A stretch of 63,838 bases of DNA, counting the filler, from Reticulomyxa filosa (Eukaryota > Protista > Foraminifera), in the NCBI GenBank assembly GCA_000512085.1. It is 19 parts of 19 records of this genome, joined end to end, with 100 filler letters (N's around TTAATTAATTAA, not from the genome) between each part and the next. Parts side by side here need not be neighbours in the genome. Positions count along the whole stretch, not along the records: positions 47,548 to 58,051 come from ASPP01020210.1; 18 more parts are not named here. The stretch is one strand, 5' to 3'. This document shows positions 47,448-58,153 of the stretch, piece after piece; within the stretch, counting starts at the first letter, position 1, and every line of letters starts with the position of its first letter. A program made the position numbers and the translations under genes. Under the pieces are notes generated by a model. That model made no database searches. It worked only from the letters and a program-made list of their open reading frames with translations, and was not told the DNA's origin.

Positions 47448-47720
47448 NNNNNNNNNNNNNNNNNNNNNNNNNNNNNNNNNNNNNNNNNNNNTTAATTAAT
47501 TAANNNNNNNNNNNNNNNNNNNNNNNNNNNNNNNNNNNNNNNNNNNNTTTTTTTTTTTTTTAAAAAAAAAAGGGGGAGGGGGGGAAAGAGTATTTAATGA
47601 TTAAACAATACTAACAAATAATAATAATAATAAAAGTCATGACCCCCCCTTTTTTTTTTTTTTTAAAAAAGTGTCCCCTTAAAAAAAAAAATTTGTACAT
47701 GATTTTTTTGTTTTGGTTAG

Positions 47721-49233
47721 ATATTCATAAGGTCTGCAAGGTGATGCACTTGGACTTGAAACCGAACAATATAATGATAAACACGTACAAGGTGGCAAAA
47801 GTGAATAGCAGTGACGGATACACGCTGATAAAGCTGGTGAACCCGCGGGTGACATTGATCGACTTTAGTGTGAGTGCGAAGATGGAAAGAGAGACGGATT
47901 TAGATGACCACGTGTGCCGTGGGTATTATGGGACGAGACGGTACCGAGCGCCGGAGATGATATTTGGTGGGACGTGGAATCGATCGATTGACACGTTCGC
48001 ATTGGCGCTGATTGTATTGGAATGCATCCAATTGTCGCCGTTGTTTGAAAACAAATACTACGATCAAGACGGAGGACGCTTTGAGCAGTTGAAGGATAGC
48101 AAAGGAAGGAAGTTGTATGAGCCGAGAGAGGTGATAGACTATTTGATGCGAATGACCAAAGCATGCTTGGGAAAACCCTCGCATCAGTTTGTCACTTGTG
48201 TCGAAAAACAATTTCAATCGCTTCTGAAAGATACCGCCACAATACCCGAGTTTTCGGAATACCAAACTAAAAAAAAATCTCTCTTTCACAAACATATGCG
48301 TAATCTGTCATCATCTTGGTCATCCTCTTCGCTTGTTTTTAAGGATGAAACCAACAAGTTTGGCCAAGACTTGATTGGAAACCCTTATTACACTCCTACG
48401 CTCTATGGCTATGGGTACGGACATATGCGTATGTTCAGGCCTACGCTGTCGCAAATCCATCAGTCACATTTGTTTGTGTGGCCAAAAGACGTGGTCGTCG
48501 GCTCGTACTTTCACGTCTATCAGCCTTTTATTCACCACAAAATGATCTTTGATTCCGATATCACTCGGCTCGATCAAATCAAACTCGCTGTTCATCATAT
48601 GCTTCGGTGGAACCCTGCCGATCGATGGACTCCCGAACTGCTTCTTCAAACTTATTTCCAACATGACAAAGACTACTTGCTTTCGTGCTTATTTACTCAA
48701 CAACAATTCTCTGATCTACTTGCCAATGGCTTCACTGATCATTTCATTAATGACTGGCATGATCCCACTTCTTCTTCGCACAAATTTACTGCTGCTACCA
48801 CTACTACTGCTACTGCTGTTGGTGTGTAATACTTTTTGCTTCTTGTATTGTTGGACTGTTGGATTGCTTGGTTGTTAATTCGTTTGTTTTTTTTTTTTTT
48901 TTTTTGTCATACATAGACGGCAATAAAAAAGAACCTTCAATGATTTCGCTGAATACGTGCATTGGAAGGATTGAAAATAAGAAAAAAAAAACTGGAAGTC
49001 AAAATGAAAAAAACCAAACACTGATAACACATTCACCCTCAACAATTAAAGCGACAAAGAATGCTACTGTTACCACACAAACTCTAACTACTACTTCTGT
49101 GCTTGACAAAAGTCAAGCAGGTGCCCAACAAGTCACTCATTCTGGTTTATTTCATGTCACTCTTAACAAAATGACATTCAAACCAACGCCTGTTGCAATT
49201 ACTTCTCATACGACTGCTGGGCAATCCAAATAA
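47721..49233 (+). CDS. CMGC (CLK/LAMMER-like) protein kinase, 5' partial
   Basis: HLDLKPNNI, LIDFS, GTRRYRAPE, YLMRM..CLG (LAMMER-like position), MLRWNPADR; S/T-rich last exon. Confidence 0.8.
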
Positions 49234-49791
49234 ATTTTTTGTTTTAATGTTGTTTTTATTTGCTTTAGGAAACAAAGAACGCGTTCAATCACTTCAGGTT
49301 CTTTTTTCTGGGTCTTATGTTTAACTGTTTTCAATTTCCAAGATTTTTTCCCCCTTTTTTATTTATTTTATTTTATTATAATTTTCCAATGTTTATTTCC
49401 AAAAAAAGTAGGTGTGGGGAGGGGAGCAAATTGTTTACTTATTAAAACCTTCTTTCTCGTCTTTTGTTCTTTTTTTTCTTTTTTGTTTAACTTGCACAAA
49501 AAAAACCAAAAAATTTGTTGATTGTAATCTTTCCATTTTTCAAAAACAAGTTGTGCAATTCTTTTTTTCATTTTTCTCTCAAATTTGAAAGTGATCTCCA
49601 AAAAAAAAATGTAATCACTATTTTTGCTGTTTCAAAAAATTGACACTTTACAAAACGATTGAACTGCTTATCCAAACGAAATTTTCAGTTATCTTTTTTT
49701 TTATTTCACAACAAAATACAGCAAAAAAATTTACTCAAAATTCAATTGCTCCAAATTTCACCAATCAACAAACAAACAAAACAAAAGAAAA

Positions 49792-52700
49792 TCAAAATTT
49801 TCCACCACGTTGCTCTACCAGCAATTTCTGCGAAGACGTCAAACCACTGACATTTGTCCAAGCACTGCCATTCATTGATAAACCGCAGCCTTGAACACCT
49901 GCTTGCCAAATACATCTCAGCGGGCCAATATCGACCTTGACTACAGAATTATCTAAAACATCTAATTTACTGTCACTCACTTCAGAACTACTGCCCCACA
50001 ACCGAATTGTTTTATCTAGTGACCAAGACACGAGTTTTGTACCATCTGGTGAAAATAATATTCCAGTTATATTATTCGAATGTCCATCCAACAACTGCAA
50101 TTTGTTCCCAGAAGATACATCCCAAACACAAATAGTGTTATCCTTCGAACAAGAAATAACTTGAGTGCCACTTGGAGAGAATGTTACTCGGTTTATTATC
50201 GTTGAATGTCCTGTAATTATTTGGGACTGTTGTCCTGATGATACATCCCATATTCGAATGGAACAATCCCACGAGCAAGACACAATTTTTGAACCATCCG
50301 AAGAAAATTGCACATCTGTCACCGCATCTGAGTGTCCCTTTAATAACTGAAGTTGTTGCCCAGATGCAACATCCCATATTCGAGCAGTTGAATCTTTCGA
50401 GCATGATACAATCTTAGTACCATCTGGAGAATACAGTGCGCGACTCACTTGCATTGAATGACCGGTCATTACTTGAAGTTTTCGTCCGGAGGACACACTC
50501 CATATTCGAATTGAATTATCCCACGAAGAAGATAAAATTTTGGTTCCATTGGATGAAAAGTGAGCCCCACTTATGACATCAGAGTGTCCTTTCAATGCTT
50601 GAAGTTGTCGTCCGGATGCCACATCCCAAATTCGAATTGTTTTATCCCATGAATAAGACAAAAGTTTAGTACCATCTGGTGAAAATTGTACTCCATTTAT
50701 CTGATTTGAATGTCCCTCCAATAATTGGATCTCTCGCCCGGATGGCACATCCCATATTCGAGCAGTAAAATCTTCTGAGCCTGAGGCGATTTTAGAACCA
50801 TCAGGTGAAAATTGAGCTCCTGTTATTTGGCCTGAATGTCCTTCCATCAATTGGACTTGCCGTCCTGACGCTACGTCCCATATTCTGATTGTATCGTCTC
50901 CTCCATATGATACAATTTCACTACCATTAGACGAAAATTGTGCACCATTCACCCATTCTGAATGCCCTTCAATTGGCTGGAGTCGTCGTGCTAACGACAC
51001 ATCCCATATTCGGATTGTCCGATCAAATGAGCAGGATACGATGTCAAAAGAATCTGGGGAAAATTGCGTCATACTTATTCGAAATGTATGACCTTCCATC
51101 AATTGAAGTTGCCGTCCGGAAGACAAATCCCATATGCGAATTGTGTAATCCTCTGAACAAGACAAAATTTTCGAACCATCTGGAGAAAATTGTACGAATG
51201 TCACAAAACTCGTGTGTCCTTCCAACAATTGGATTTGTTGCCCTGATGCTACATCCCATATTATTATTATTTTTTCCCATGAACAAGATACAATCTTAGT
51301 GCCATCTGGAGAAAATCGGGCTCCATTCACTCTTTGTGAATGTCCACGCAACACTTGGATTTGTCTTCCGGAAGATAGATCCCATATTCGAATTGTGGTA
51401 TCACTTGAGCTTGATACAATTTTGGTACTATCTGGAGAGAACTGCACAGCGGTTACGCCATCGGTGTGCCCTTCTATTGATTGTATTTGTTTCCCAGATG
51501 ATACCTCCCACAGACGAATCGTTCTGTCCTCCGAACATGAAACAATTTTGGCACCATCTGGGGAAAATTGTGCTTCATTCACAATATCTGAATGCCCAGT
51601 CAATAATTGAAGTTGCTGTCCCGACAGTATGTCCCAAATTCGAATTGTCTTATCTGCTGAACACGAAACAAATTTGGTGCCATCCCGAGAATATTGAACT
51701 GTACTTACAGAATCCGAGTGTCCTTCTAACAATTGAAGCTGTTGTCCCGATGCCACATCCCACACACGAATTGTTTTATCTTTCGAACATGAGACAATTT
51801 TAGAACCATCTGGAGAATATTGCACCGCATTTATGATGTCTGTATGTCCCTTAAAGTATGCATATTCACCAAAGTAAATTTCATTCATTGACGCATTCGT
51901 AAAGTTGCCTTTATTCAAGAATGCTTGGAACAAGCTAACTCGATCTAAATTGGCATTTTTGAAACTAGTCCCTTCAAGGAATGCACGATCTAAAATCGCA
52001 TGAGGAATTTTAACATTGTCCCAATTCTGATAGTGCAAATTAACATTTGCAGCATTAAGTATAGTCACTGCATTTGCCGCCGCAATGCTAACATCTTCTT
52101 TTGTCTTTGATGCTTCGACAATTCGAAACAATCTTGATTTTAAATTTGCAAATATTGGTTGTGTATCATAAATGCGTTCACCAATAAAATTGATAATTCC
52201 CGGCTCTTCATTTAATAATTTACGATTGATAAGTAATTTATGGGCATGCATTTCAAATTGCTTTTGGTATTCTTCGTTGTTTAGATCAGTATCTGTATTG
52301 GGCTTCCATGAAACTATATCAAGTACGATTTGATGTGCTGCATAATATTCTTGACAAGATCTATGTAAAAACTGGTATTTGTTTTCACCAATTCTCCTTA
52401 ATATGTACTTGGCAACACTGTCGCCCTTGAAATACTTTTTCCAAACATCTGTTGCCTTAGAAGCTAATTTATCCACTTTTTTCGCTTTTGTTTCAATTTT
52501 TTCATCCACATGTTTATTTTCATTTGCTAATTCTGTTTTGATCACGTCCCAAGTTTCTTGCCTTACTTGCTCAATATCTCTTTCAGTTGCAATTGGATTT
52601 CCCTGAAAAAACATCTCAAAGCCTAAGTCTTGACAATACTTTTGAAATGTAAATTTGATTTTTCTGATATTAATTTGTATTCGTAATTCTGCCAGCTTGG

Positions 52701-55479
52701 CAGCAAGGTTGTGAATATGAATATCAATCCACTGTTCATTGAACGCTTCATACACCTGGGCTCTCGAAATTTTGGTCCCTGATGGATGTCGTTTCAGTAA
52801 TGACGGTAATACTGTCAATATCAGTTGCAGTAAGAATGGTTCTTCCACCATTTTCTGCAAATTTGGATAATATTTCAATGTTTCTTCATATTTTTGCGTT
52901 GTCCAATTCAAATCCGTATTCAATTTGTTCTTTTTATTCATTTTCACAAATTTGTCAATATAACCATACATTTGTTCTTTTGAAAAAGGCCACAGATATG
53001 CCATTGAGGTTGTTATTGAGCTATTTTCTTGACTGGAGCCCACTAAGACTTGCTTGATGTCATCTTCGTTTATCACATGACTTCGGCAAGTGACAATGAC
53101 TTTTGCATTCCATTGAGCTAAATTAAAACGATTATAGAAATAATATCCATTACTTTGATTCTTACTGTAAGCATCAAATATTTCATCAAATCCATCCAAA
53201 ATAAATACAAATGAAATGTTTTCACGGACAATATCTAGTATTTCTTTGCTGATGTGTTTCATTTGCAAAGCTTGACCAATCATTTCTTTTTCATTGGCCA
53301 CATTGTAAAATTTTGGTAATGAAATGTAAACAGGAACAAATTTAGTTGAGTCATTGACATAATTTTTCCACCAAGACTCTTCTAAATGACGACAAAATAA
53401 GCTTTTTCCTGAGCCAGATTTTCCTTGTAATACCATCACTACCTTTTGCTCAGCATCTTTTTTTTCTTCTAAAAAATCAATCACATGTTGATGGCAGTCA
53501 TACCCATTGTTTTTCTTGTTATCGTCACTATCAATGTATGGAAAATTATTTGCTTGCAATGGGACGTATGTTTCAAGAGCTTGTAACATTGCTTCATCTT
53601 CTTCCAATTCCTGTTTTGCCGATTTTTGCAGTATAGATACAACATCGGCACAACTTGCTGGATTCGTTTCACCAATAATGTGTCGTTTGTAATACTCAAA
53701 TAAAATCACATAATTTGCTTTCCCTTTCAGTTTTTCCGGAGTAAACTTGCAAAGTTGATCATACACAAATTTAGCAAGTTTCAATGAAATATCTGCATTG
53801 ATTTGTTCCTCTGTCTTTCCTTTTAATTGAGGTGCTTGTAACACTCCAATGTCAGAGTGTGGTTTGTAGCGATTGGCAATTTTTTTGATTTCCCTTTCAT
53901 CAATCCACTCACAAACAATATCATTTATTCCAGTCAAAGTTTCTTCACTTGCTTGTTTAAATTCTTCTTCTTCCGAGTCATTTGGTTTCCATGCTCTGAT
54001 CAGTTCATACAGTAAATGACTTAATTTAGGATTTTCGATAGTCGTGTATCCTTCCAATGTTGTAAAATTTTTCAAAGTGGCTTGCATTTCCACATACACA
54101 TCGTGCTTTGGAACATACAGTTTGATGTTATGAAAACGATGATGAGTTTTCGATTGTCTGTCAAAGAAATCCTTGTCTTCTGACACAATCAAATTAAATT
54201 GCTCTGCTTTTTTTATGACCGCAACGGCAGTTTGCAATTTGATTGGATTATCACACAAAATAGTAAATCTTCCAATGTCAAATATTTGATTAAAATCACC
54301 ACCATAATCTGCTTGAATTTTTTCCAATAATCTCTCATTCCCTTTCAAACTGGGTGGCTTTACAACTGTAATTTCATATTTCTGCAACTCTGTTACCAAA
54401 TTGGTGATTTCAATGCTCTTCATTGCATGCTCACTTCTTTCTCTCAGATCTTCAAGACTTTGTGCATGTTGCCGAATTTTGTTCGCTTTTAACTCATATG
54501 AGAGTCCAGCTTTGATTGAATAAGAGCACTGATAATTGTTATCTTTTACAGGTTGCAAATCTCCACTTGCACAAATATAATGCTCAGAATTATAAAACAT
54601 TGCTTTCACAATATATCCAACAGTTGACTTTCTGCAATCAGGACAAGAAAAGGAAGTCGTGTCTGAAATAAATGATATATTGGTAAACCCAACATTCACC
54701 CACACAGGTAGCTTTCCTTTTGAAGCTAAGCAGGCTTCATTTACGCAATATCCCTGCAAATTAATTCCCGGCCTTGTCTCTCCAATTTCCGTTTTTTCGA
54801 TTTCTTTTTGTAAGCTTCTGCCCCTTTCCAATGGCCCTCTTTCAATTGCAATATCGATTACTTGTTCTTTCTATTTCATCAGCAGAACAAACAAACAAAC
54901 AAACAAACAAATAACAAAAACACATAACTAAAAGAAAAAAAAAGAAACTACATTCTTAAACGGATTACTTGCTCAATAATTTCCAGTTGATCGACTTTAT
55001 CCTCAGATGTCATTGTAGTCTTTGTTTCACACGCAACATATTTTTTTATACAACAACAACAACAAAAGAAAAAGATAAGATAACATGGAAGAAAAAAAGA
55101 TTAGCAAATAAAAATAAAAGCATTCAATATATATATCCTTACAATTTCTTCCATCGACTTTTGGACAATATTCTTAATAACCAGTTCAACGTTTCCATTA
55201 AACTGATTTATCCACTGTTGTGCCTCTTCTTTGCCAATCATGTCACCGAATAGTCTAATCAACGTTCGAATCTCTTTCTCATATTTTTTATTTTCTCCAT
55301 TGTCAACCTTATCGTCTGCTTTTACATTTGTATCTTGCATCCCTCCACAGCACTTCACATGACCTACAAACATATAGCAAGAAAAGATAATTGCCCTTTA
55401 TCAACAAAACACATAATTTATAGACACATTTGATACATAGCAAAGGCTTATAACTCTTAGTTTCAAAGTAAACAGACAT
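49792..55479 (-). CDS. NLR-like protein: UBA/CUE-like + Cys4 Zn domain + RelA/SpoT-like nucleotidyltransferase + NACHT + pentapeptide + 15 WD40
   Basis: Three short 5' exons (start ATG at 55479) splice onto the 1679-aa ORF. Walker A GKSGSGKS at 53401-53424; Walker B FILDGFDE at about 53181-53207; pentapeptide repeats at about 51865-52030; 15 GH..WD repeats at about 49990-51860. Confidence 0.9.
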
Positions 55480-56095
55480 GCTTCGCCAATCTTCATCACA
55501 AGTTTCCGTTGTAGTTTGCTACAGTGTTCACGTTATGTTGACCAATGTGCTGCTAACTTATTCTCTTTTCTTATTAGATAAATACAAAACAACTAACTTC
55601 TTTAAACCAAGCACTCGGCCTCTCTGTCGTTCCATAAGCTATTACACTCCCTAAAATATATCACAGCTTTTTTGTAGGTAGATTTGACAAGAGTTTGGTA
55701 GAAACGCGTTATTTCGAGTGAAAAAAAAATAATTTTGAACAAAGTACCATTTGTTGCCATAATGATGCCAAAATTCTGATTCTTGGCTTTGGAGGTCTGA
55801 TCAAAATATGTAAAACTTTTTTCTAATGATCGAGATTCACAAAAGCTCGAGGAACTTTTTTTTTTTACTTTTGGGAAAGCTAGAAACTATGGCAGAAGAG
55901 TCATGACAAGAAAGGCTTTTTTGATTAGTTGATTGAACACCAACAAACAAGATAAAACAAGATTGATTGGGATCAAGTTTTGTAAAGTCATTTGTGAAAT
56001 GATTGCAAAGACGAATTATTTATGTTTGCAAGAGTTGATGAACCTGCAAGAGGAAAAACAATTGTATTAAGGAAAAAAAAAAGGTATTTTCTATA

Positions 56096-57497
56096 TTACA
56101 CGTTTGGAGTAGCCCAATAGCAGTATTCTTCCATATTGAAGATATCGACACCACGTTGAGCATAAAAGAATCCTTCTTCTCCCCAAAGTCTATTATATGT
56201 GTAAATGTGTTAAGGCAAAGTGGGATTGTATTTGAAGCAAGGAGGGGAAAAAAAGGAGGGGAGGGACATACGTTCCAAAGCTGTTACGACCAATCCAATA
56301 CTCCAATTGAGACGATTCATCAAAGCCCCATCCCAGCAGCACCAAATCATGTGTAGTTCCTGTTGATGTGTGTGTGTGTTGGAAATAGTTGTTATAAGCT
56401 GCATGCAGACCAATCTCTCAAAGCAATGAGAAAAAAAAAGAGTAGAGAGAGAGAGAGCACACCATTGTATTTGGTGTTGTCAACGATGATGCCTCCAGTG
56501 TAGTTTTCAAAGGAATCAGCATGGGCATACATGGAGCAAACAATAGGTCCTCGTGACATGATTTCGGAGCGCATGGTTTCTTCCATCGTCATATTGCCTT
56601 TGGACAATGTTTCATAGTCGATGAGGCCATATTCGTCTACATACACACGTATCTCCGGAGGGGCCAGATAGCATGTTCCAAAGCGATTGCATGTGCGACA
56701 CATCATCTGGTCACAGCTCACTTCGCTGAAGTGTGAAGGGCTGGAGCCAATATAAGGGTCACATGACTCATCCGATATTCCTTACATTTTTTTGTTATTT
56801 GATTTAACCTGATTAAACCACATATATGCATATACATATATGTATATGTATACGTATATATGTATATATATATATATATACGTATATATACACAAAAATA
56901 CCTGTCTCTTTGATAAGAGCATAACCCAAAAGGGCGCTGCCACCATAACAGGAACCCGCGTTAATGTTCGAAGCTCCGTACATGCCGCAATCCAACAAAT
57001 ACTGAGGAGCCAAATTGATGTCCCACGGAACACCTCCATTTGTGTTGTAAGCGTTGATCTTAATGCGATCTGACAATGCCCCGGTTGCTGCGTGCGCCCA
57101 ACATGATCCGCAAGGCGATGGCACAAATTGATTGCGTGGTGGTGTCACTAAGCAATTCCCGTCGATATTTCGCCAATCAAAATTCGTTGGCAAATCCTCT
57201 GCTTTCATTGACACATAGGGCGGATCTTTCACTATGTGCCCCTTATGGATCGCTCCAGAGTTCGCATTGCTCGTATCTGGACGCCATGAACATCCTTTTT
57301 TTTATTGTCGTTGTTGTTCGACTATAAATGCTAGTTTAAACAAAACTGAGACAAAACAAGAGGAAAAAAAAACAAAAAAAAAAAGAAACATTACCGCCAA
57401 AAGAATGCCAGCCCTCTGGTGTATGACTACAAGTACGCCGGCCCTGAGGTACCAAAAACAAACTGAATACAAAAACCAAAATTTCCAATCTTATCAT
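56096..57497 (-). CDS. CTSZ: Cathepsin Z/X-like papain-family cysteine protease, multi-exon
   Basis: Signal peptide; LPTNFDWRNIDG..RNQ..CGSCWAH..LSDRIKI; THDLVLLGWG; YWIGRNSFG; WGEEGFF; CYWATP*. Confidence 0.88.
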
Positions 57498-58153
57498 TTT
57501 ATGCGGCACCCTTTCGTCAATTTTTTCTACTGCTTGTCTTCACCAACTGTGCTCTTGTTTTATTTTTATTTACAGTTGCAAAAGAGAAAAATGTTCGTAT
57601 CACACTTTCAGTATGTCTTTTAGTGATTACTTTGGATGTAAATATGAAGACAATTTTAATAACTCAAACCAACGAAAAGCTGCAAACTTTTCATTATTTT
57701 ATTTTTATTTAATAAATCAGGAAAAGTGTCTTGATTGGTTGATTTTCAAAAATTATTGTGTATTCACACGTTTATTATCTGTGATTTTTTTCTAGGTTTT
57801 CTTCTTCCTTGCAACTCATTGAATTATTTGAACTTCAAATGTGTAATTTTCAAGTCAAGCACTGAACATAGAATCAGAATACTATTACTTGGGAATGATA
57901 CTTACATTGATAAATATATACGACGTATTAAAGCATATTTCAGTCAGATTTGTGTAGCATTTGAAAAAATATATTACTGTCAACAAGGCCGATTTTCTAT
58001 TCAAATAGAATTCACTTGCTATCAAGATACTGTAGTGTAAGTGTAGTTCATNNNNNNNNNNNNNNNNNNNNNNNNNNNNNNNNNNNNNNNNNNNNTTAAT
58101 TAATTAANNNNNNNNNNNNNNNNNNNNNNNNNNNNNNNNNNNNNNNNNNNNCG

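What the first reader, a model, noticed from the sequence alone, without database searches (positions are those of the whole stretch)
49792..55479. Eukaryotic NLR-like receptor with a RelA/SpoT (alarmone synthetase / toxSAS)-like effector domain
Seen: one uninterrupted ORF contains, in order, a Cys4 domain; a segment at about 54369-53986 reading PPSLKGNERLLEKIQADYGGDFNQIFDIGRFTILC...DKDFFDRQSKTHHRFHNIKL...VYVEMQATL...SHLLYELIR; NACHT Walker A and B; pentapeptide repeats; and 15 WD40 repeats. Established: RelA/SpoT synthetases have the ordered motifs xK..(S/R)..K, D..(G)R, D(Y/F)..GY...H and ExQ. NACHT-WD40 proteins (HET-E/NWD type) are ligand-gated oligomerising immune receptors whose N-terminal domain is the effector. 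Bacterial toxSAS enzymes (FaRel, CapRel) kill infected cells by making (pp)pApp or by pyrophosphorylating tRNA. Inference: this is a protist innate-immunity receptor in which WD40 sensing activates a nucleotide-messenger or toxic pyrophosphotransferase. The usual GY is replaced by THHRFH, hinting at altered substrate specificity. I know of no characterised NLR with this effector.
Basis: partly seen in the sequence, partly recalled or inferred. Interest (0 to 1): 0.92.

Follow-up and report, generated by a model that had tools for sequence, protein, structure and literature searches.

The report
Foraminiferan NLR with Tas1-like alarmone-synthetase domain
This is an intact gene of the foraminiferan Reticulomyxa filosa, one of at least 56 copies, for an NLR-type receptor. 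Its front end is a domain related to bacterial toxins that make the alarmone (p)ppApp; this layout is already catalogued in fungi and bacteria but has never been tested at the bench.

Summary
The piece is a Reticulomyxa filosa contig. The minus-strand gene (exon 1 54969-55013, 98-nt GT..AG intron, exon 2 49792-54870) is the deposited 1707-aa 'WD-40 repeat-containing protein'.

Domain order:
- Cys4 beta-sandwich
- RelA/SpoT-homologue (RSH) synthetase-like domain
- NACHT with Walker A and B
- about 8 pentapeptide repeats
- 15 WD40 repeats of exactly 42 aa

The RSH call is solid. Pfam E is 8e-5, though below the gathering score. The AlphaFold model (pLDDT 86.7) gives only RSH synthetases as its top 50 Foldseek matches, best Tas1 (E 2.7e-8). 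A profile of the R. filosa copies matches bacterial Tas1-like toxin domains at 99.7% probability. The RSH domain is the most conserved part of the family and the WD40 region the least conserved of the structured domains.

The acceptor-stacking Tyr is His in 35 copies and Tyr in 3.

The novelty claim is overstated. RelA_SpoT-NACHT-WD40 NLRs were catalogued in fungi in 2014, and alarmone synthetases are listed among bacterial NACHT effectors. New here are the rhizarian host, the Tas1-like clade, the Cys4 module and the large expansion. Enzyme activity, product, expression and immune role remain untested.

The parts
54969..55013 (-). Exon 1 of the deposited gene model (15 codons, begins MTSEDK)
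   Evidence: P0002 (1707 aa) is 100% identical to the window. Its first 15 residues map here and are followed by GT.
54871..54968 (-). Intron, 98 nt, GT..AG, T-rich
   Evidence: Read directly from the sequence. Joining exon 1 to 54870 reproduces P0002 exactly.
49792..54870 (-). Exon 2: the rest of the coding sequence through the stop codon (1692 codons). All domains lie in this single exon.
54475..54774 (-). Cys4 beta-sandwich domain (P0002 aa 48-147). Four Cys are invariant in the 39 paralog modules, so it is presumably Zn-binding. No Pfam family.
   Evidence: Alignment A1 invariants C10, C15, C44, C47. AlphaFold pLDDT 92.5. No Pfam hit. No clear PDB match: Foldseek best E 0.15, VIA best Z 5.5. 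ESM-Atlas matches at TM 0.72-0.75 to eukaryotic clusters fused to ubiquitin, RING or ART domains.
53905..54462 (-). RelA/SpoT-homologue synthetase-like domain of the Tas1/Apk1-like clade (P0002 aa 152-337). Motifs: LKGNERLLEK 54319-54348; FDIGRFT 54262-54282; DKDFFDRQSKTHHRFHN 54127-54177; VEMQATL 54073-54093; SHLLYELIR 53995-54021.
   Evidence: Pfam PF04607 E 8e-5. PDB sequence search: best hit Tas1. Foldseek: top 50 all RSH synthetases, Tas1 E 2.7e-8. VIA: Z 12.9-13.2. hhalign against bacterial Tas1-like domains: 99.7%, E 6.6e-26. Motif residues 39/39 invariant.
52960..53439 (-). NACHT NTPase core. Walker A GKSGSGKS 53401-53424; Walker B FVFILDGFDE 53182-53211.
   Evidence: PF05729 E 1.8e-9, 38.1 bits, above the 26.7 cut-off. 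Motif coordinates.
51880..51999 (-). About 8 pentapeptide repeats linking the NACHT-associated helical region to the WD40 region
   Evidence: PF00805 E 0.006, below cut-off. PF00805 is precomputed for many paralogs. The repeats can be read directly.
49960..51849 (-). 15 WD40 repeats with an exact 42-aa period, enough for two propellers. This is the presumed sensor.
   Evidence: PF00400, 15 stretches, 512 bits. Mean identity between repeats 55%, with variability concentrated at repeat positions 4, 5, 8, 23 and 25. It is the least conserved structured region among paralogs, at 0.52.

Best explanation
The gene encodes a STAND/NLR-type receptor of the syncytial foraminiferan Reticulomyxa filosa. 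It belongs to a family of at least 56 paralogs.

Shown by computation: the domain order is Cys4 beta-sandwich, Tas1/Apk1-like RSH pyrophosphokinase domain, NACHT ATPase, pentapeptide linker and 15 WD40 repeats. The RSH-like domain has the synthetase fold and an intact set of donor-ATP/Mg2+ residues (K191, R195, K199, D213, R216, E276, Q278 in P0002 numbering). It is the most conserved part of the family. The WD40 region is the most variable structured part, and its variation sits at a few positions in each repeat.

Inferred by analogy with other NLRs and with toxSAS enzymes: a ligand bound by the WD40 propellers releases the NACHT switch. Oligomerisation then activates or un-masks the N-terminal enzyme. 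The enzyme transfers pyrophosphate from ATP to the 3'-OH of a purine nucleotide, most likely an adenine nucleotide, giving (p)ppApp as Tas1 does. That would drain ATP and arrest or kill the affected part of the cell. This would suit defence or allorecognition in a fusing, multinucleate network.

The acceptor-stacking Tyr is His in most copies, so the acceptor may be unusual.
For: Identity:
- 100% match to the deposited R. filosa protein, and 56 paralogs share the N-terminal module.

RSH homology:
- Pfam PF04607 E 8.1e-5.
- Tas1 (6ox6) is the best PDB sequence hit for the single sequence (E 0.053) and for the R. filosa-only profile (E 0.011).
- The AlphaFold2 model has pLDDT 86.7 and pTM 0.79.
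- The top 50 Foldseek PDB matches are all RSH synthetases; Tas1 leads with E 2.7e-8.
- VIA gives Z 13.2 for RelQ, 12.9 for Tas1 (172 residues, 21% id) and 11 for CapRel. Other nucleotidyltransferases score 9 or less.
- hhalign of the R. filosa-only profile against 33 non-foraminiferan Tas1-like domains gives 99.7% and E 6.6e-26 over 171 columns.
- The joint profile hits Tas1 at E 2.2e-29 and SAS enzymes at 5e-12 to 1e-4.

Conservation:
- All seven predicted catalytic residues are invariant in 39/39 modules. The same positions are invariant or nearly so in distant relatives.
- Column identity among 30 full-length paralogs: RSH 0.76, NACHT 0.65, WD40 0.52.

NLR frame:
- NACHT scores above the Pfam cut-off and has Walker A and B.
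- WD40 variability is confined to 5 of 42 positions.

The fusion is older than the family:
- An environmental protein, P0151, is collinear with this one. Its RSH-like part is 28% identical (E 1e-8) and its NACHT 29% identical (E 2e-64).
Against: - There are no activity, product or expression data. No RNA run was listed.
- The Pfam score (23.3-24 bits) is below the gathering score of 27.
- The Tyr that contacts the acceptor base in alarmone synthetases is His here. It is His in 35 of 39 modules, Tyr in 3 and Asp in 1. In FaRel2 even Y128F impairs catalysis (PMC11782079). So this domain may be slow, may use another acceptor, or may be inactive.
- The Tas1-like clade also holds enzymes that make (p)ppGpp as well as (p)ppApp (SaEAS, PMC12691689). 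Clade membership therefore does not fix the product.
- How NACHT oligomerisation would switch on an RSH domain has no experimental precedent.
- The immune or allorecognition role is pure analogy.
Confidence: 0.5

Rival explanations
1. The effector is a tRNA 3'-CCA pyrophosphokinase like CapRel, FaRel2 or PhRel2. On activation it blocks translation rather than draining ATP.
For: CapRel structures are good fold matches: Foldseek E 1e-5 and VIA Z 11 with the longest aligned range, 183 residues. An altered acceptor site (HH in place of GY) could fit a non-nucleotide acceptor. toxSAS enzymes of this type act in abortive-infection defence (PMC11782079).
Against: Sequence relatives are Tas1-like, not CapRel- or FaRel2-like. 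Tas1 is the only PDB hit for the R. filosa-only profile, and Tas1 is far ahead for the joint profile. tRNA-targeting toxSAS keep the acceptor Tyr (FaRel2 Y128). I identified no N-terminal tRNA-recognition region; the preceding domain is a beta-sandwich with no clear known relative.
Confidence: 0.12
2. The effector makes a signalling nucleotide, (p)ppGpp or a related compound, that is not itself lethal. It could act as a second messenger for downstream host factors, or as a signal aimed at bacterial prey or symbionts, as Dyrka et al. proposed for the fungal RelA_SpoT NLRs.
For: The idea was put forward for the fungal counterparts (PMC4986451). Members of the Tas1-like clade can make (p)ppGpp (SaEAS). 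R. filosa is a bacterivore. The conserved enzyme core argues for a defined product.
Against: The guanine-stacking Tyr is not kept. No partner receptor or hydrolase gene is evident in this 10.5-kb piece: the neighbours are a kinase fragment and a papain-like peptidase. The nearest characterised relative is a toxin.
Confidence: 0.13
3. The RSH-like domain is a pseudoenzyme. It is a conserved structural or adaptor module, perhaps nucleotide-binding, that signals by protein-protein contacts after NACHT oligomerisation.
For: The acceptor Tyr is lost in 36 of 39 modules. The Pfam score is below threshold. Many NLR N-terminal domains are adaptors. High conservation alone does not prove catalysis.
Against: Every donor-site and Mg2+ residue is invariant in 39/39 copies and is shared with bacterial toxins at about 25% overall identity. 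That pattern is typical of retained catalysis. The first (N-terminal) of the two modules in P0001 shows several departures from otherwise nearly invariant residues, including Asp at the acceptor-Tyr position; this may be what relaxed constraint looks like.
Confidence: 0.15

Closest known systems
Fungal RelA_SpoT-NACHT-WD40 NLRs (Dyrka et al. 2014, e.g. Gaeumannomyces graminis; listed as a 'canonical' N-terminal domain in Sordariales, 2025)
   Same: The same tripartite order: an RSH-type N-terminal enzymatic 'class 1' effector, a NACHT and WD40 repeats. Both are known only from sequence analysis, with no biochemistry.
   Different: The host is a rhizarian (foraminiferan), not a fungus. In fungi the domain is rare (17 NLRs in Sordariales by their count). 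Here one effector type is carried by at least 56 paralogs. This protein also has a Cys4 beta-sandwich in front and a pentapeptide-repeat linker. Its RSH domain is Tas1-like and scores below the Pfam threshold. I could not test a direct sequence relationship to the fungal domains. The nearest fungal relatives of the NACHT-WD40 chassis, in Linnemannia, lack the RSH domain.
Tas1/Apk1, the Pseudomonas aeruginosa T6SS (p)ppApp synthetase toxin (PDB 6OX6), and its homologues on eCIS or polymorphic-toxin proteins
   Same: Tas1 is the closest solved structure and the closest sequence relative. The K..R..EK, D..R.T and E.Q motifs and the C-terminal H..YE..R helix are shared and collinear.
   Different: Tas1 is a secreted, constitutively active toxin held in check by an immunity protein. 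Here the domain is fused to an NLR switch inside a eukaryote. The GY acceptor motif is HH. Identity is about 20%. No immunity gene is evident.
CapRel(SJ46), a fused toxSAS-antitoxin phage sensor
   Same: A single polypeptide in which a toxSAS-fold enzyme is kept off by another domain until a foreign protein is sensed. The fold match is Z 11.
   Different: CapRel is a small bacterial protein, gated by a pseudo-Zn-finger domain that covers the ATP site, and it targets tRNA. Here the gating would come from a NACHT-WD40 module. The Cys4 domain is a roughly 100-aa beta-sandwich that did not return CapRel among its fold-search matches.
HET-E/NWD-type NACHT-WD40 proteins of fungi, and bacterial NACHT proteins with enzymatic effectors
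   Same: A NACHT with Walker A/B and a C-terminal WD40 sensor whose variation sits at a few positions per repeat. The N-terminal effector can be swapped on a conserved chassis: one chassis relative, P0178, carries a PARP domain. Kibby et al. list alarmone synthetases among bacterial NACHT effectors.
   Different: The repeats are not the near-identical, concertedly evolving repeats of fungal NWD genes. Here they show 68-74% matches at DNA level and 55% at protein level. No allorecognition or defence phenotype is known.

Membership tests
RSH (RelA/SpoT homologue) synthetase domain, Pfam PF04607 | Match to the family HMM at or above the curated gathering score | tested here: not met
   23.3-24.0 bits against a cut-off of 27, with E 5e-5 to 8e-5. 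Paralog P0001 carries a precomputed PF04607 hit. 25 of 42 members of the wider alignment match at E<0.01, best 5.5e-11.
RSH (RelA/SpoT homologue) synthetase domain, Pfam PF04607 | Synthetase fold: a central mixed beta-sheet framed by helices | tested here: met
   The top 50 Foldseek PDB matches are all RSH synthetases, E 2.7e-8 to 4e-4. VIA gives Z 9-13.2 for RSH enzymes and 9 or less for other nucleotidyltransferases.
RSH (RelA/SpoT homologue) synthetase domain, Pfam PF04607 | Donor-ATP/Mg2+ motifs: basic residues of Syn1, Asp of Syn2, E.Q of Syn4 | tested here: met
   K163, R167, K171, D185, R188, E248 and Q250 (ORF numbering) are invariant in 39/39 paralog modules. They align with invariant columns of distant relatives and of Tas1, RelP and RelQ.
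RSH (RelA/SpoT homologue) synthetase domain, Pfam PF04607 | G-Y acceptor motif, whose Tyr contacts the acceptor base | tested here: not met
   This protein has H-H at the aligned positions. Across 39 modules the second position is H 35, Y 3, D 1. The role of the Tyr is taken from PMC11782079.
RSH (RelA/SpoT homologue) synthetase domain, Pfam PF04607 | Pyrophosphate transfer from ATP to a 3'-OH acceptor | not testable with these tools
   Needs an enzyme assay.
Tas1/Apk1-like (p)ppApp synthetase toxin clade | Closer in sequence to Tas1 and its homologues than to housekeeping SAS or long RSH enzymes | tested here: met
   Tas1 is the only PDB hit of the R. filosa-only profile that falls in the RSH family (E 0.011). 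It has the highest identity among structure matches, 20-21%. hhalign to Tas1-like domains gives 99.7%. The joint profile scores Tas1 at E 2.2e-29 and SAS enzymes at 5e-12 or weaker.
Tas1/Apk1-like (p)ppApp synthetase toxin clade | Delivery context: a secretion-system or eCIS carrier domain and a cognate immunity protein | tested here: not met
   The context is a eukaryotic NLR. The bacterial relatives carry eCIS_core and similar domains. The neighbours here are a kinase fragment and a papain-like peptidase.
Tas1/Apk1-like (p)ppApp synthetase toxin clade | The product is (p)ppApp, with ATP depletion | not testable with these tools
   Needs LC-MS or ion-exchange analysis of reaction products.
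NACHT-WD40 STAND/NLR (HET-E/NWD type) | A NACHT domain above the Pfam cut-off, with Walker A and Walker B | tested here: met
   PF05729 scores 38.1 bits against 26.7. GKSGSGKS and FVFILDGFDE are present.
NACHT-WD40 STAND/NLR (HET-E/NWD type) | Tripartite layout: N-terminal effector, central NOD, C-terminal WD40 repeats | tested here: met
   The whole layout lies in one exon.
NACHT-WD40 STAND/NLR (HET-E/NWD type) | Highly similar internal repeats with hypervariable positions, as in fungal NWD genes | tested here: inconclusive
   Variability is concentrated at 5 of 42 positions. However, the repeats are only 55% identical at protein level and 68-74% at DNA level, well below my recollection of the near-identical repeats of fungal NWD genes.
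NACHT-WD40 STAND/NLR (HET-E/NWD type) | A role in non-self recognition or regulated cell death | not testable with these tools
   No genetics or phenotype is available for R. filosa.
Fungal RelA_SpoT-NACHT-WD40 NLRs (Dyrka 2014) | Same domain order | tested here: met
   One search compared.
Fungal RelA_SpoT-NACHT-WD40 NLRs (Dyrka 2014) | Common descent of the RSH or NACHT parts with the fungal genes | not tested
The fungal chassis relatives that were found (Linnemannia, 26-27% id) have no RSH domain.

The most novel reading that the evidence does not exclude
R. filosa may run a eukaryotic, NLR-gated alarmone suicide system. At least 56 receptors, each with its own WD40 specificity, would share a Tas1-like pyrophosphokinase. 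On activation the enzyme would flood the local cytoplasm with (p)ppApp or a new His-specified product and collapse ATP. That would seal off infected or incompatible parts of a fusing, multinucleate network. The preceding Cys4 beta-sandwich, an undescribed module also fused to ubiquitin-like and ADP-ribosyltransferase domains in other eukaryotes, would act as its regulatory or targeting partner. This would be the first (p)ppApp-type effector working inside a eukaryotic cell's own immunity.
Probability: 0.25. Interest if true: 0.8.

Novelty: new variant of a known kind. Interest (0 to 1): 0.55.

Why it matters
Outside plastid-related proteins, RSH synthetases have rarely been reported in eukaryotes. 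No NLR with such an effector has been characterised in any kingdom, in any paper I could find.

This family offers a clean test case:
- one conserved enzyme module on many receptors;
- a close structural template (Tas1);
- a clear set of catalytic residues to mutate;
- a natural Tyr/His polymorphism at the acceptor site among paralogs.

If the module is active, it would link bacterial toxSAS biochemistry to eukaryotic NLR signalling. It would extend NLR-type non-self recognition to Rhizaria, where the searchable literature describes none. If it is inactive, it would be an example of a toxin fold turned into an adaptor.

The gene itself is already in GenBank under a generic name. The gain is therefore annotation and a hypothesis, not a new sequence.

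Tried and rejected
- RNA evidence: the look-up of sequencing runs listed no run for 53300-55100. Expression and splicing remain untested.
- The R. filosa genome paper (Curr Biol 2014) is not held, so I could not check whether it mentions this family. Full-text searches for Reticulomyxa with NACHT or NLR found nothing relevant.
- NCBIfam gave nothing useful.
- The ESM-Atlas feature search for the RSH part gave only unnamed clusters at scores of 0.90 or less. These are leads only.
- The Cys4 domain has no Pfam family and no convincing PDB fold relative. Foldseek's best E is 0.15. VIA's best Z is 5.5, with cupin-like and jelly-roll sandwiches within the chance range. I leave it unclassified rather than call it a cupin or a new fold.
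- Extra N-terminal extensions of nine paralogs and the 155-aa pre-NACHT linker have no Pfam domains.
- Looking for the RSH-NACHT fusion elsewhere: a scan of bacterial and archaeal genomes found only a Nostoc NACHT match. A metagenome scan found 22 NACHT-chassis loci. Six-frame HMM searches found the RSH-like domain only in L001 and L002, which were already known. These scans are pattern-based, so a blank is weak evidence.
- A bacterial-contaminant origin of the contig is rejected. The contig has a spliceosomal intron, intron-split eukaryotic neighbours and 100% identity to R. filosa records.

Full report
**What is in the window.** The piece 47548-58051 has 28-43% G+C. Its long minus-strand ORF, 49792..54831, translates without a stop. 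A protein search found a 100% identical deposited protein, P0002, 1707 aa, named 'WD-40 repeat-containing protein [Reticulomyxa filosa]'. So the piece comes from the freshwater foraminiferan R. filosa (Rhizaria). P0002 begins with 15 residues that map to 55013-54969. They are followed by GT, a T-rich 98-nt intron ending in AG at 54871, and then the long exon. The finding's upper limit of 55479 is therefore too far upstream, because in-frame stops lie above 54870. Everything of interest lies in the single 5.1-kb exon. The neighbours are eukaryotic: a protein-kinase fragment on the plus strand (47639-48829) and a papain-family peptidase split by a TA-rich intron on the minus strand (56392-57232).

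**Checking the observation.** Pfam finds 15 WD40 repeats (512 bits) and a NACHT domain above its cut-off (38.1 against 26.7 bits, ORF aa 465-624). It also finds a weak pentapeptide-repeat match (aa 945-979, E 0.006) and a RelA_SpoT match at aa 163-250 (E 8.1e-5, 23.3 bits against a cut-off of 27). Walker A (GKSGSGKS) and Walker B (FVFILDGFDE) are present. The WD40 repeats have an exact 42-aa period and are 55% identical to one another on average. Their variability is concentrated at repeat positions 4, 5, 8, 23 and 25. At DNA level the repeats are only 68-74% alike, so this is not the near-identical repeat array of fungal NWD genes.

**Is the N-terminal segment really an RSH synthetase domain?** Five lines of evidence agree.

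1. Sequence against solved structures. The best hit of the single sequence is Tas1, the Pseudomonas T6SS (p)ppApp synthetase (E 0.053). A profile of 39 R. filosa modules (A1) raises this to E 0.011, with a second collinear stretch on the C-terminal H..YE..R helix.
2. Structure. AlphaFold2 with A1 gave a confident model (pLDDT 86.7, pTM 0.79). Its 50 best Foldseek matches in the PDB are all RSH synthetases: Tas1 first (E 2.7e-8, TM 0.60 by target), then RelP, RelQ, CapRel and Rel. Re-alignment gave Z 13.2 for RelQ, 12.9 for Tas1 (172 residues, 21% identity), about 12 for RelP and 11 for CapRel. Other Pol-beta-type nucleotidyltransferases such as Cid1 reach 9 at most.
3. An exhaustive profile search of 1.8 billion representatives. 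It found 63 close relatives, then a second tier (E 1e-10 to 1e-3) that matches only the RSH part. The named close relatives I looked up are R. filosa proteins, and the rest are unnamed environmental sequences. The second tier includes C-terminal domains of large proteins with eCIS_core domains, which are probable injected-toxin carriers. 25 of 42 aligned members match PF04607.
4. Profile against profile. The R. filosa-only alignment scores 99.7% probability and E 6.6e-26 over 171 columns against 33 of these outside domains (A4).
5. The joint profile hits Tas1 at E 2.2e-29 over its whole toxin domain, and SAS enzymes at 5e-12 to 1e-4.

The domain is thus a divergent RSH synthetase domain of the Tas1/Apk1-like branch. 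It fails Pfam's curated threshold, which is probably why this particular protein carries no RelA_SpoT annotation. The paralog P0001 does carry one.

**Catalytic residues.** All seven are invariant in 39 of 39 modules. Only 62 of 321 alignment columns are invariant. The same positions are invariant or nearly so across relatives that share about 25% identity. The D..R.T form of the second motif and the lack of an Arg after E.Q are features shared with Tas1 and its relatives, not defects.

The one real departure is the G-Y motif. At the position of the Tyr that contacts the acceptor base, this protein has His. Across modules the count is His 35, Tyr 3 (P0033, P0035, P0042) and Asp 1, the last in the first of the two modules of P0001. 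Published work on toxSAS enzymes describes this Tyr as the acceptor-base contact and uses Y128F in FaRel2 as a catalytically impaired variant (PMC11782079). So the donor half of the site looks intact, while the acceptor half is altered. This fits a different acceptor, lower activity or loss of activity, and sequence alone cannot decide between them.

**The family and its pattern of constraint.** At least 56 R. filosa proteins share the N-terminal module, and more appear as fragments in this fragmented assembly. In 30 full-length paralogs the mean pairwise column identity by region is:

| Region | Identity |
|---|---|
| RSH-like domain | 0.76 |
| Pentapeptide linker | 0.68 |
| NACHT core | 0.65 |
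| Cys4 domain | 0.63 |
| WD40 region | 0.52 |

A constant enzyme on a diversifying repeat domain is the pattern expected of an effector-sensor receptor family.

The NACHT-pentapeptide-WD40 chassis has more distant relatives (26-33% identity) in Mortierellomycota fungi (Linnemannia) and in metagenomes. One of these carries a PARP domain and none has the RSH-like domain. That fits effector swapping on a shared chassis.

One environmental protein, P0151 (1170 aa; locus L001), is collinear with the R. filosa proteins across both parts. Its RSH-like part is 28% identical (E 1e-8) with a T-H-Y motif, and its NACHT is 29% identical over 536 residues (E 2e-64). It has ankyrin repeats in place of the Cys4 domain and no WD40 repeats. 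The RSH-NACHT fusion is therefore older than the R. filosa expansion, and Tyr is probably the ancestral state. Pattern-based scans of bacterial genomes and metagenomes found no further examples of the fusion.

**The Cys4 domain.** Residues 48-147 of P0002 fold confidently (pLDDT 92.5) into a small beta-sandwich with four invariant cysteines, CxxxxC and CxxC. It has no Pfam family and no convincing solved relative. The same module occurs after ubiquitin-like domains in unrelated eukaryotic proteins. It also matches ESM-Atlas clusters from rotifers, sponges and Mucoromycota, where it is fused to ubiquitin, RING or ADP-ribosyltransferase domains (TM 0.68-0.75). Its role here is unknown. Some bacterial toxSAS enzymes are held off by small pseudo-Zn-finger domains, so a regulatory role is a reasonable guess, but nothing here tests it.

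**How it most likely works.** Computation shows the architecture, the fold, the intact donor site, the family and the conservation gradient. The rest is inferred from NLR biology and from Tas1-like enzymes. In that reading, the WD40 propellers bind a ligand and the NACHT exchanges nucleotide and oligomerises. The N-terminal enzyme then becomes active and transfers pyrophosphate from ATP to a purine nucleotide. The most likely product is (p)ppApp, with loss of ATP as described for Tas1. I put about 0.5 on an active pyrophosphokinase effector of this kind.

The rivals are tRNA 3'-pyrophosphorylation as in CapRel (0.12), a non-lethal signalling alarmone, possibly aimed at bacteria as Dyrka et al. 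suggested for fungi (0.13), and a pseudoenzyme or adaptor (0.15). R. filosa is a multinucleate network that fuses with itself. A role in allorecognition, as for fungal HET-E-type NLRs, is as plausible as pathogen defence. Neither role is tested.

**Comparison with what is known, and novelty.** But the architecture is not new. Dyrka et al. (2014) listed RelA_SpoT among fungal NLR N-terminal effector domains and give RELA_SPOT-NACHT-WD40 proteins of Gaeumannomyces graminis. A 2025 survey treats it as a canonical N-terminal domain in Sordariales. Kibby et al. name alarmone synthetases among the enzymatic effectors of bacterial NACHT proteins. A 2025 survey of 1,369 Apk1/Tas1 homologues concerns bacteria and does not use the word eukaryote at all.

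What is new here:
- the lineage: no paper in the searchable library links Reticulomyxa with NACHT or NLR proteins;
- the assignment of the effector to the Tas1-like branch;
- the His-for-Tyr acceptor site with natural Tyr variants;
- the extra Cys4 module and pentapeptide linker;
- the scale of the expansion around a single effector type.

I rate it a new variant of a known kind, of moderate interest. It is a good, testable system rather than a new category.

**Limits.** No expression data could be obtained. The taxonomic origin of P0151 is unknown; its gene has 50-53% G+C against 36-38% in the upstream flank.

Noticed in passing
window 54475-54774 (-); also P0143, P0152, P0156, P0129: The Cys4 beta-sandwich domain has no Pfam family and no clear solved relative. 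It recurs in unrelated eukaryotic proteins behind ubiquitin-like domains. In ESM-Atlas clusters from rotifers, sponges and Mucoromycota it is fused to ubiquitin, RING or ADP-ribosyltransferase domains. It looks like an undescribed mobile module.
   Followed up: partly
L001:2745-6257 (protein P0151, ENA metagenome contig): An environmental protein with ankyrin repeats, an RSH-like domain (T-H-Y motif) and a NACHT is collinear with the R. filosa proteins (NACHT 29% id, E 2e-64). The gene has 50-53% G+C against 36-38% in the upstream flank. Organism unknown.
   Followed up: partly
paralog P0001 (RFI_08856), aa 24-344 and 406-726: This paralog carries the Cys4-RSH module twice in tandem before its NACHT. 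The first copy departs from otherwise nearly invariant residues, including Asp at the acceptor-Tyr position.
   Followed up: partly
P0175-P0181: The NACHT-pentapeptide-WD40 chassis has relatives at 26-33% identity in Linnemannia (Mortierellomycota) and in metagenomes. They have other N-termini, one with a PARP catalytic domain (P0178), and none has the RSH-like domain.
   Followed up: partly
P0139 (Guillardia theta XP_005840511.1, aa 1152-1209) and P0153 (MMETSP transcript): Tas1-like RSH domains also turn up in other protists outside any NLR context: a cryptophyte hypothetical protein and a marine protist transcript.
   Followed up: no
P0116 (3127 aa), P0146, P0132: Outside foraminifera, several of the best-scoring relatives of the domain sit at or near the C-terminus of large proteins with an N-terminal eCIS_core domain. 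P0116 also carries a calpain-type peptidase domain after the RSH-like domain.
   Followed up: no
window 56392-57232 (-): A papain-family (C1) cysteine peptidase gene lies just upstream on the same strand. It is split into at least two exons by a TA-rich intron that reads as a Tyr/Ile-rich microsatellite when translated.
   Followed up: partly
window 47639-48829 (+): A 396-aa ORF holds the C-terminal half of a protein kinase domain (Pfam profile positions 114-248). It is probably an exon of a gene cut off by the edge of the piece.
   Followed up: no
L002:60-1475 (protein P0069), and P0061, P0083: Metagenome contigs encode close relatives of the Cys4-RSH module (E 8e-83 for P0069). P0069 appears to be a complete 471-aa gene without a NACHT. 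The module may therefore also exist on its own, or in relatives of R. filosa in the environment.
   Followed up: partly
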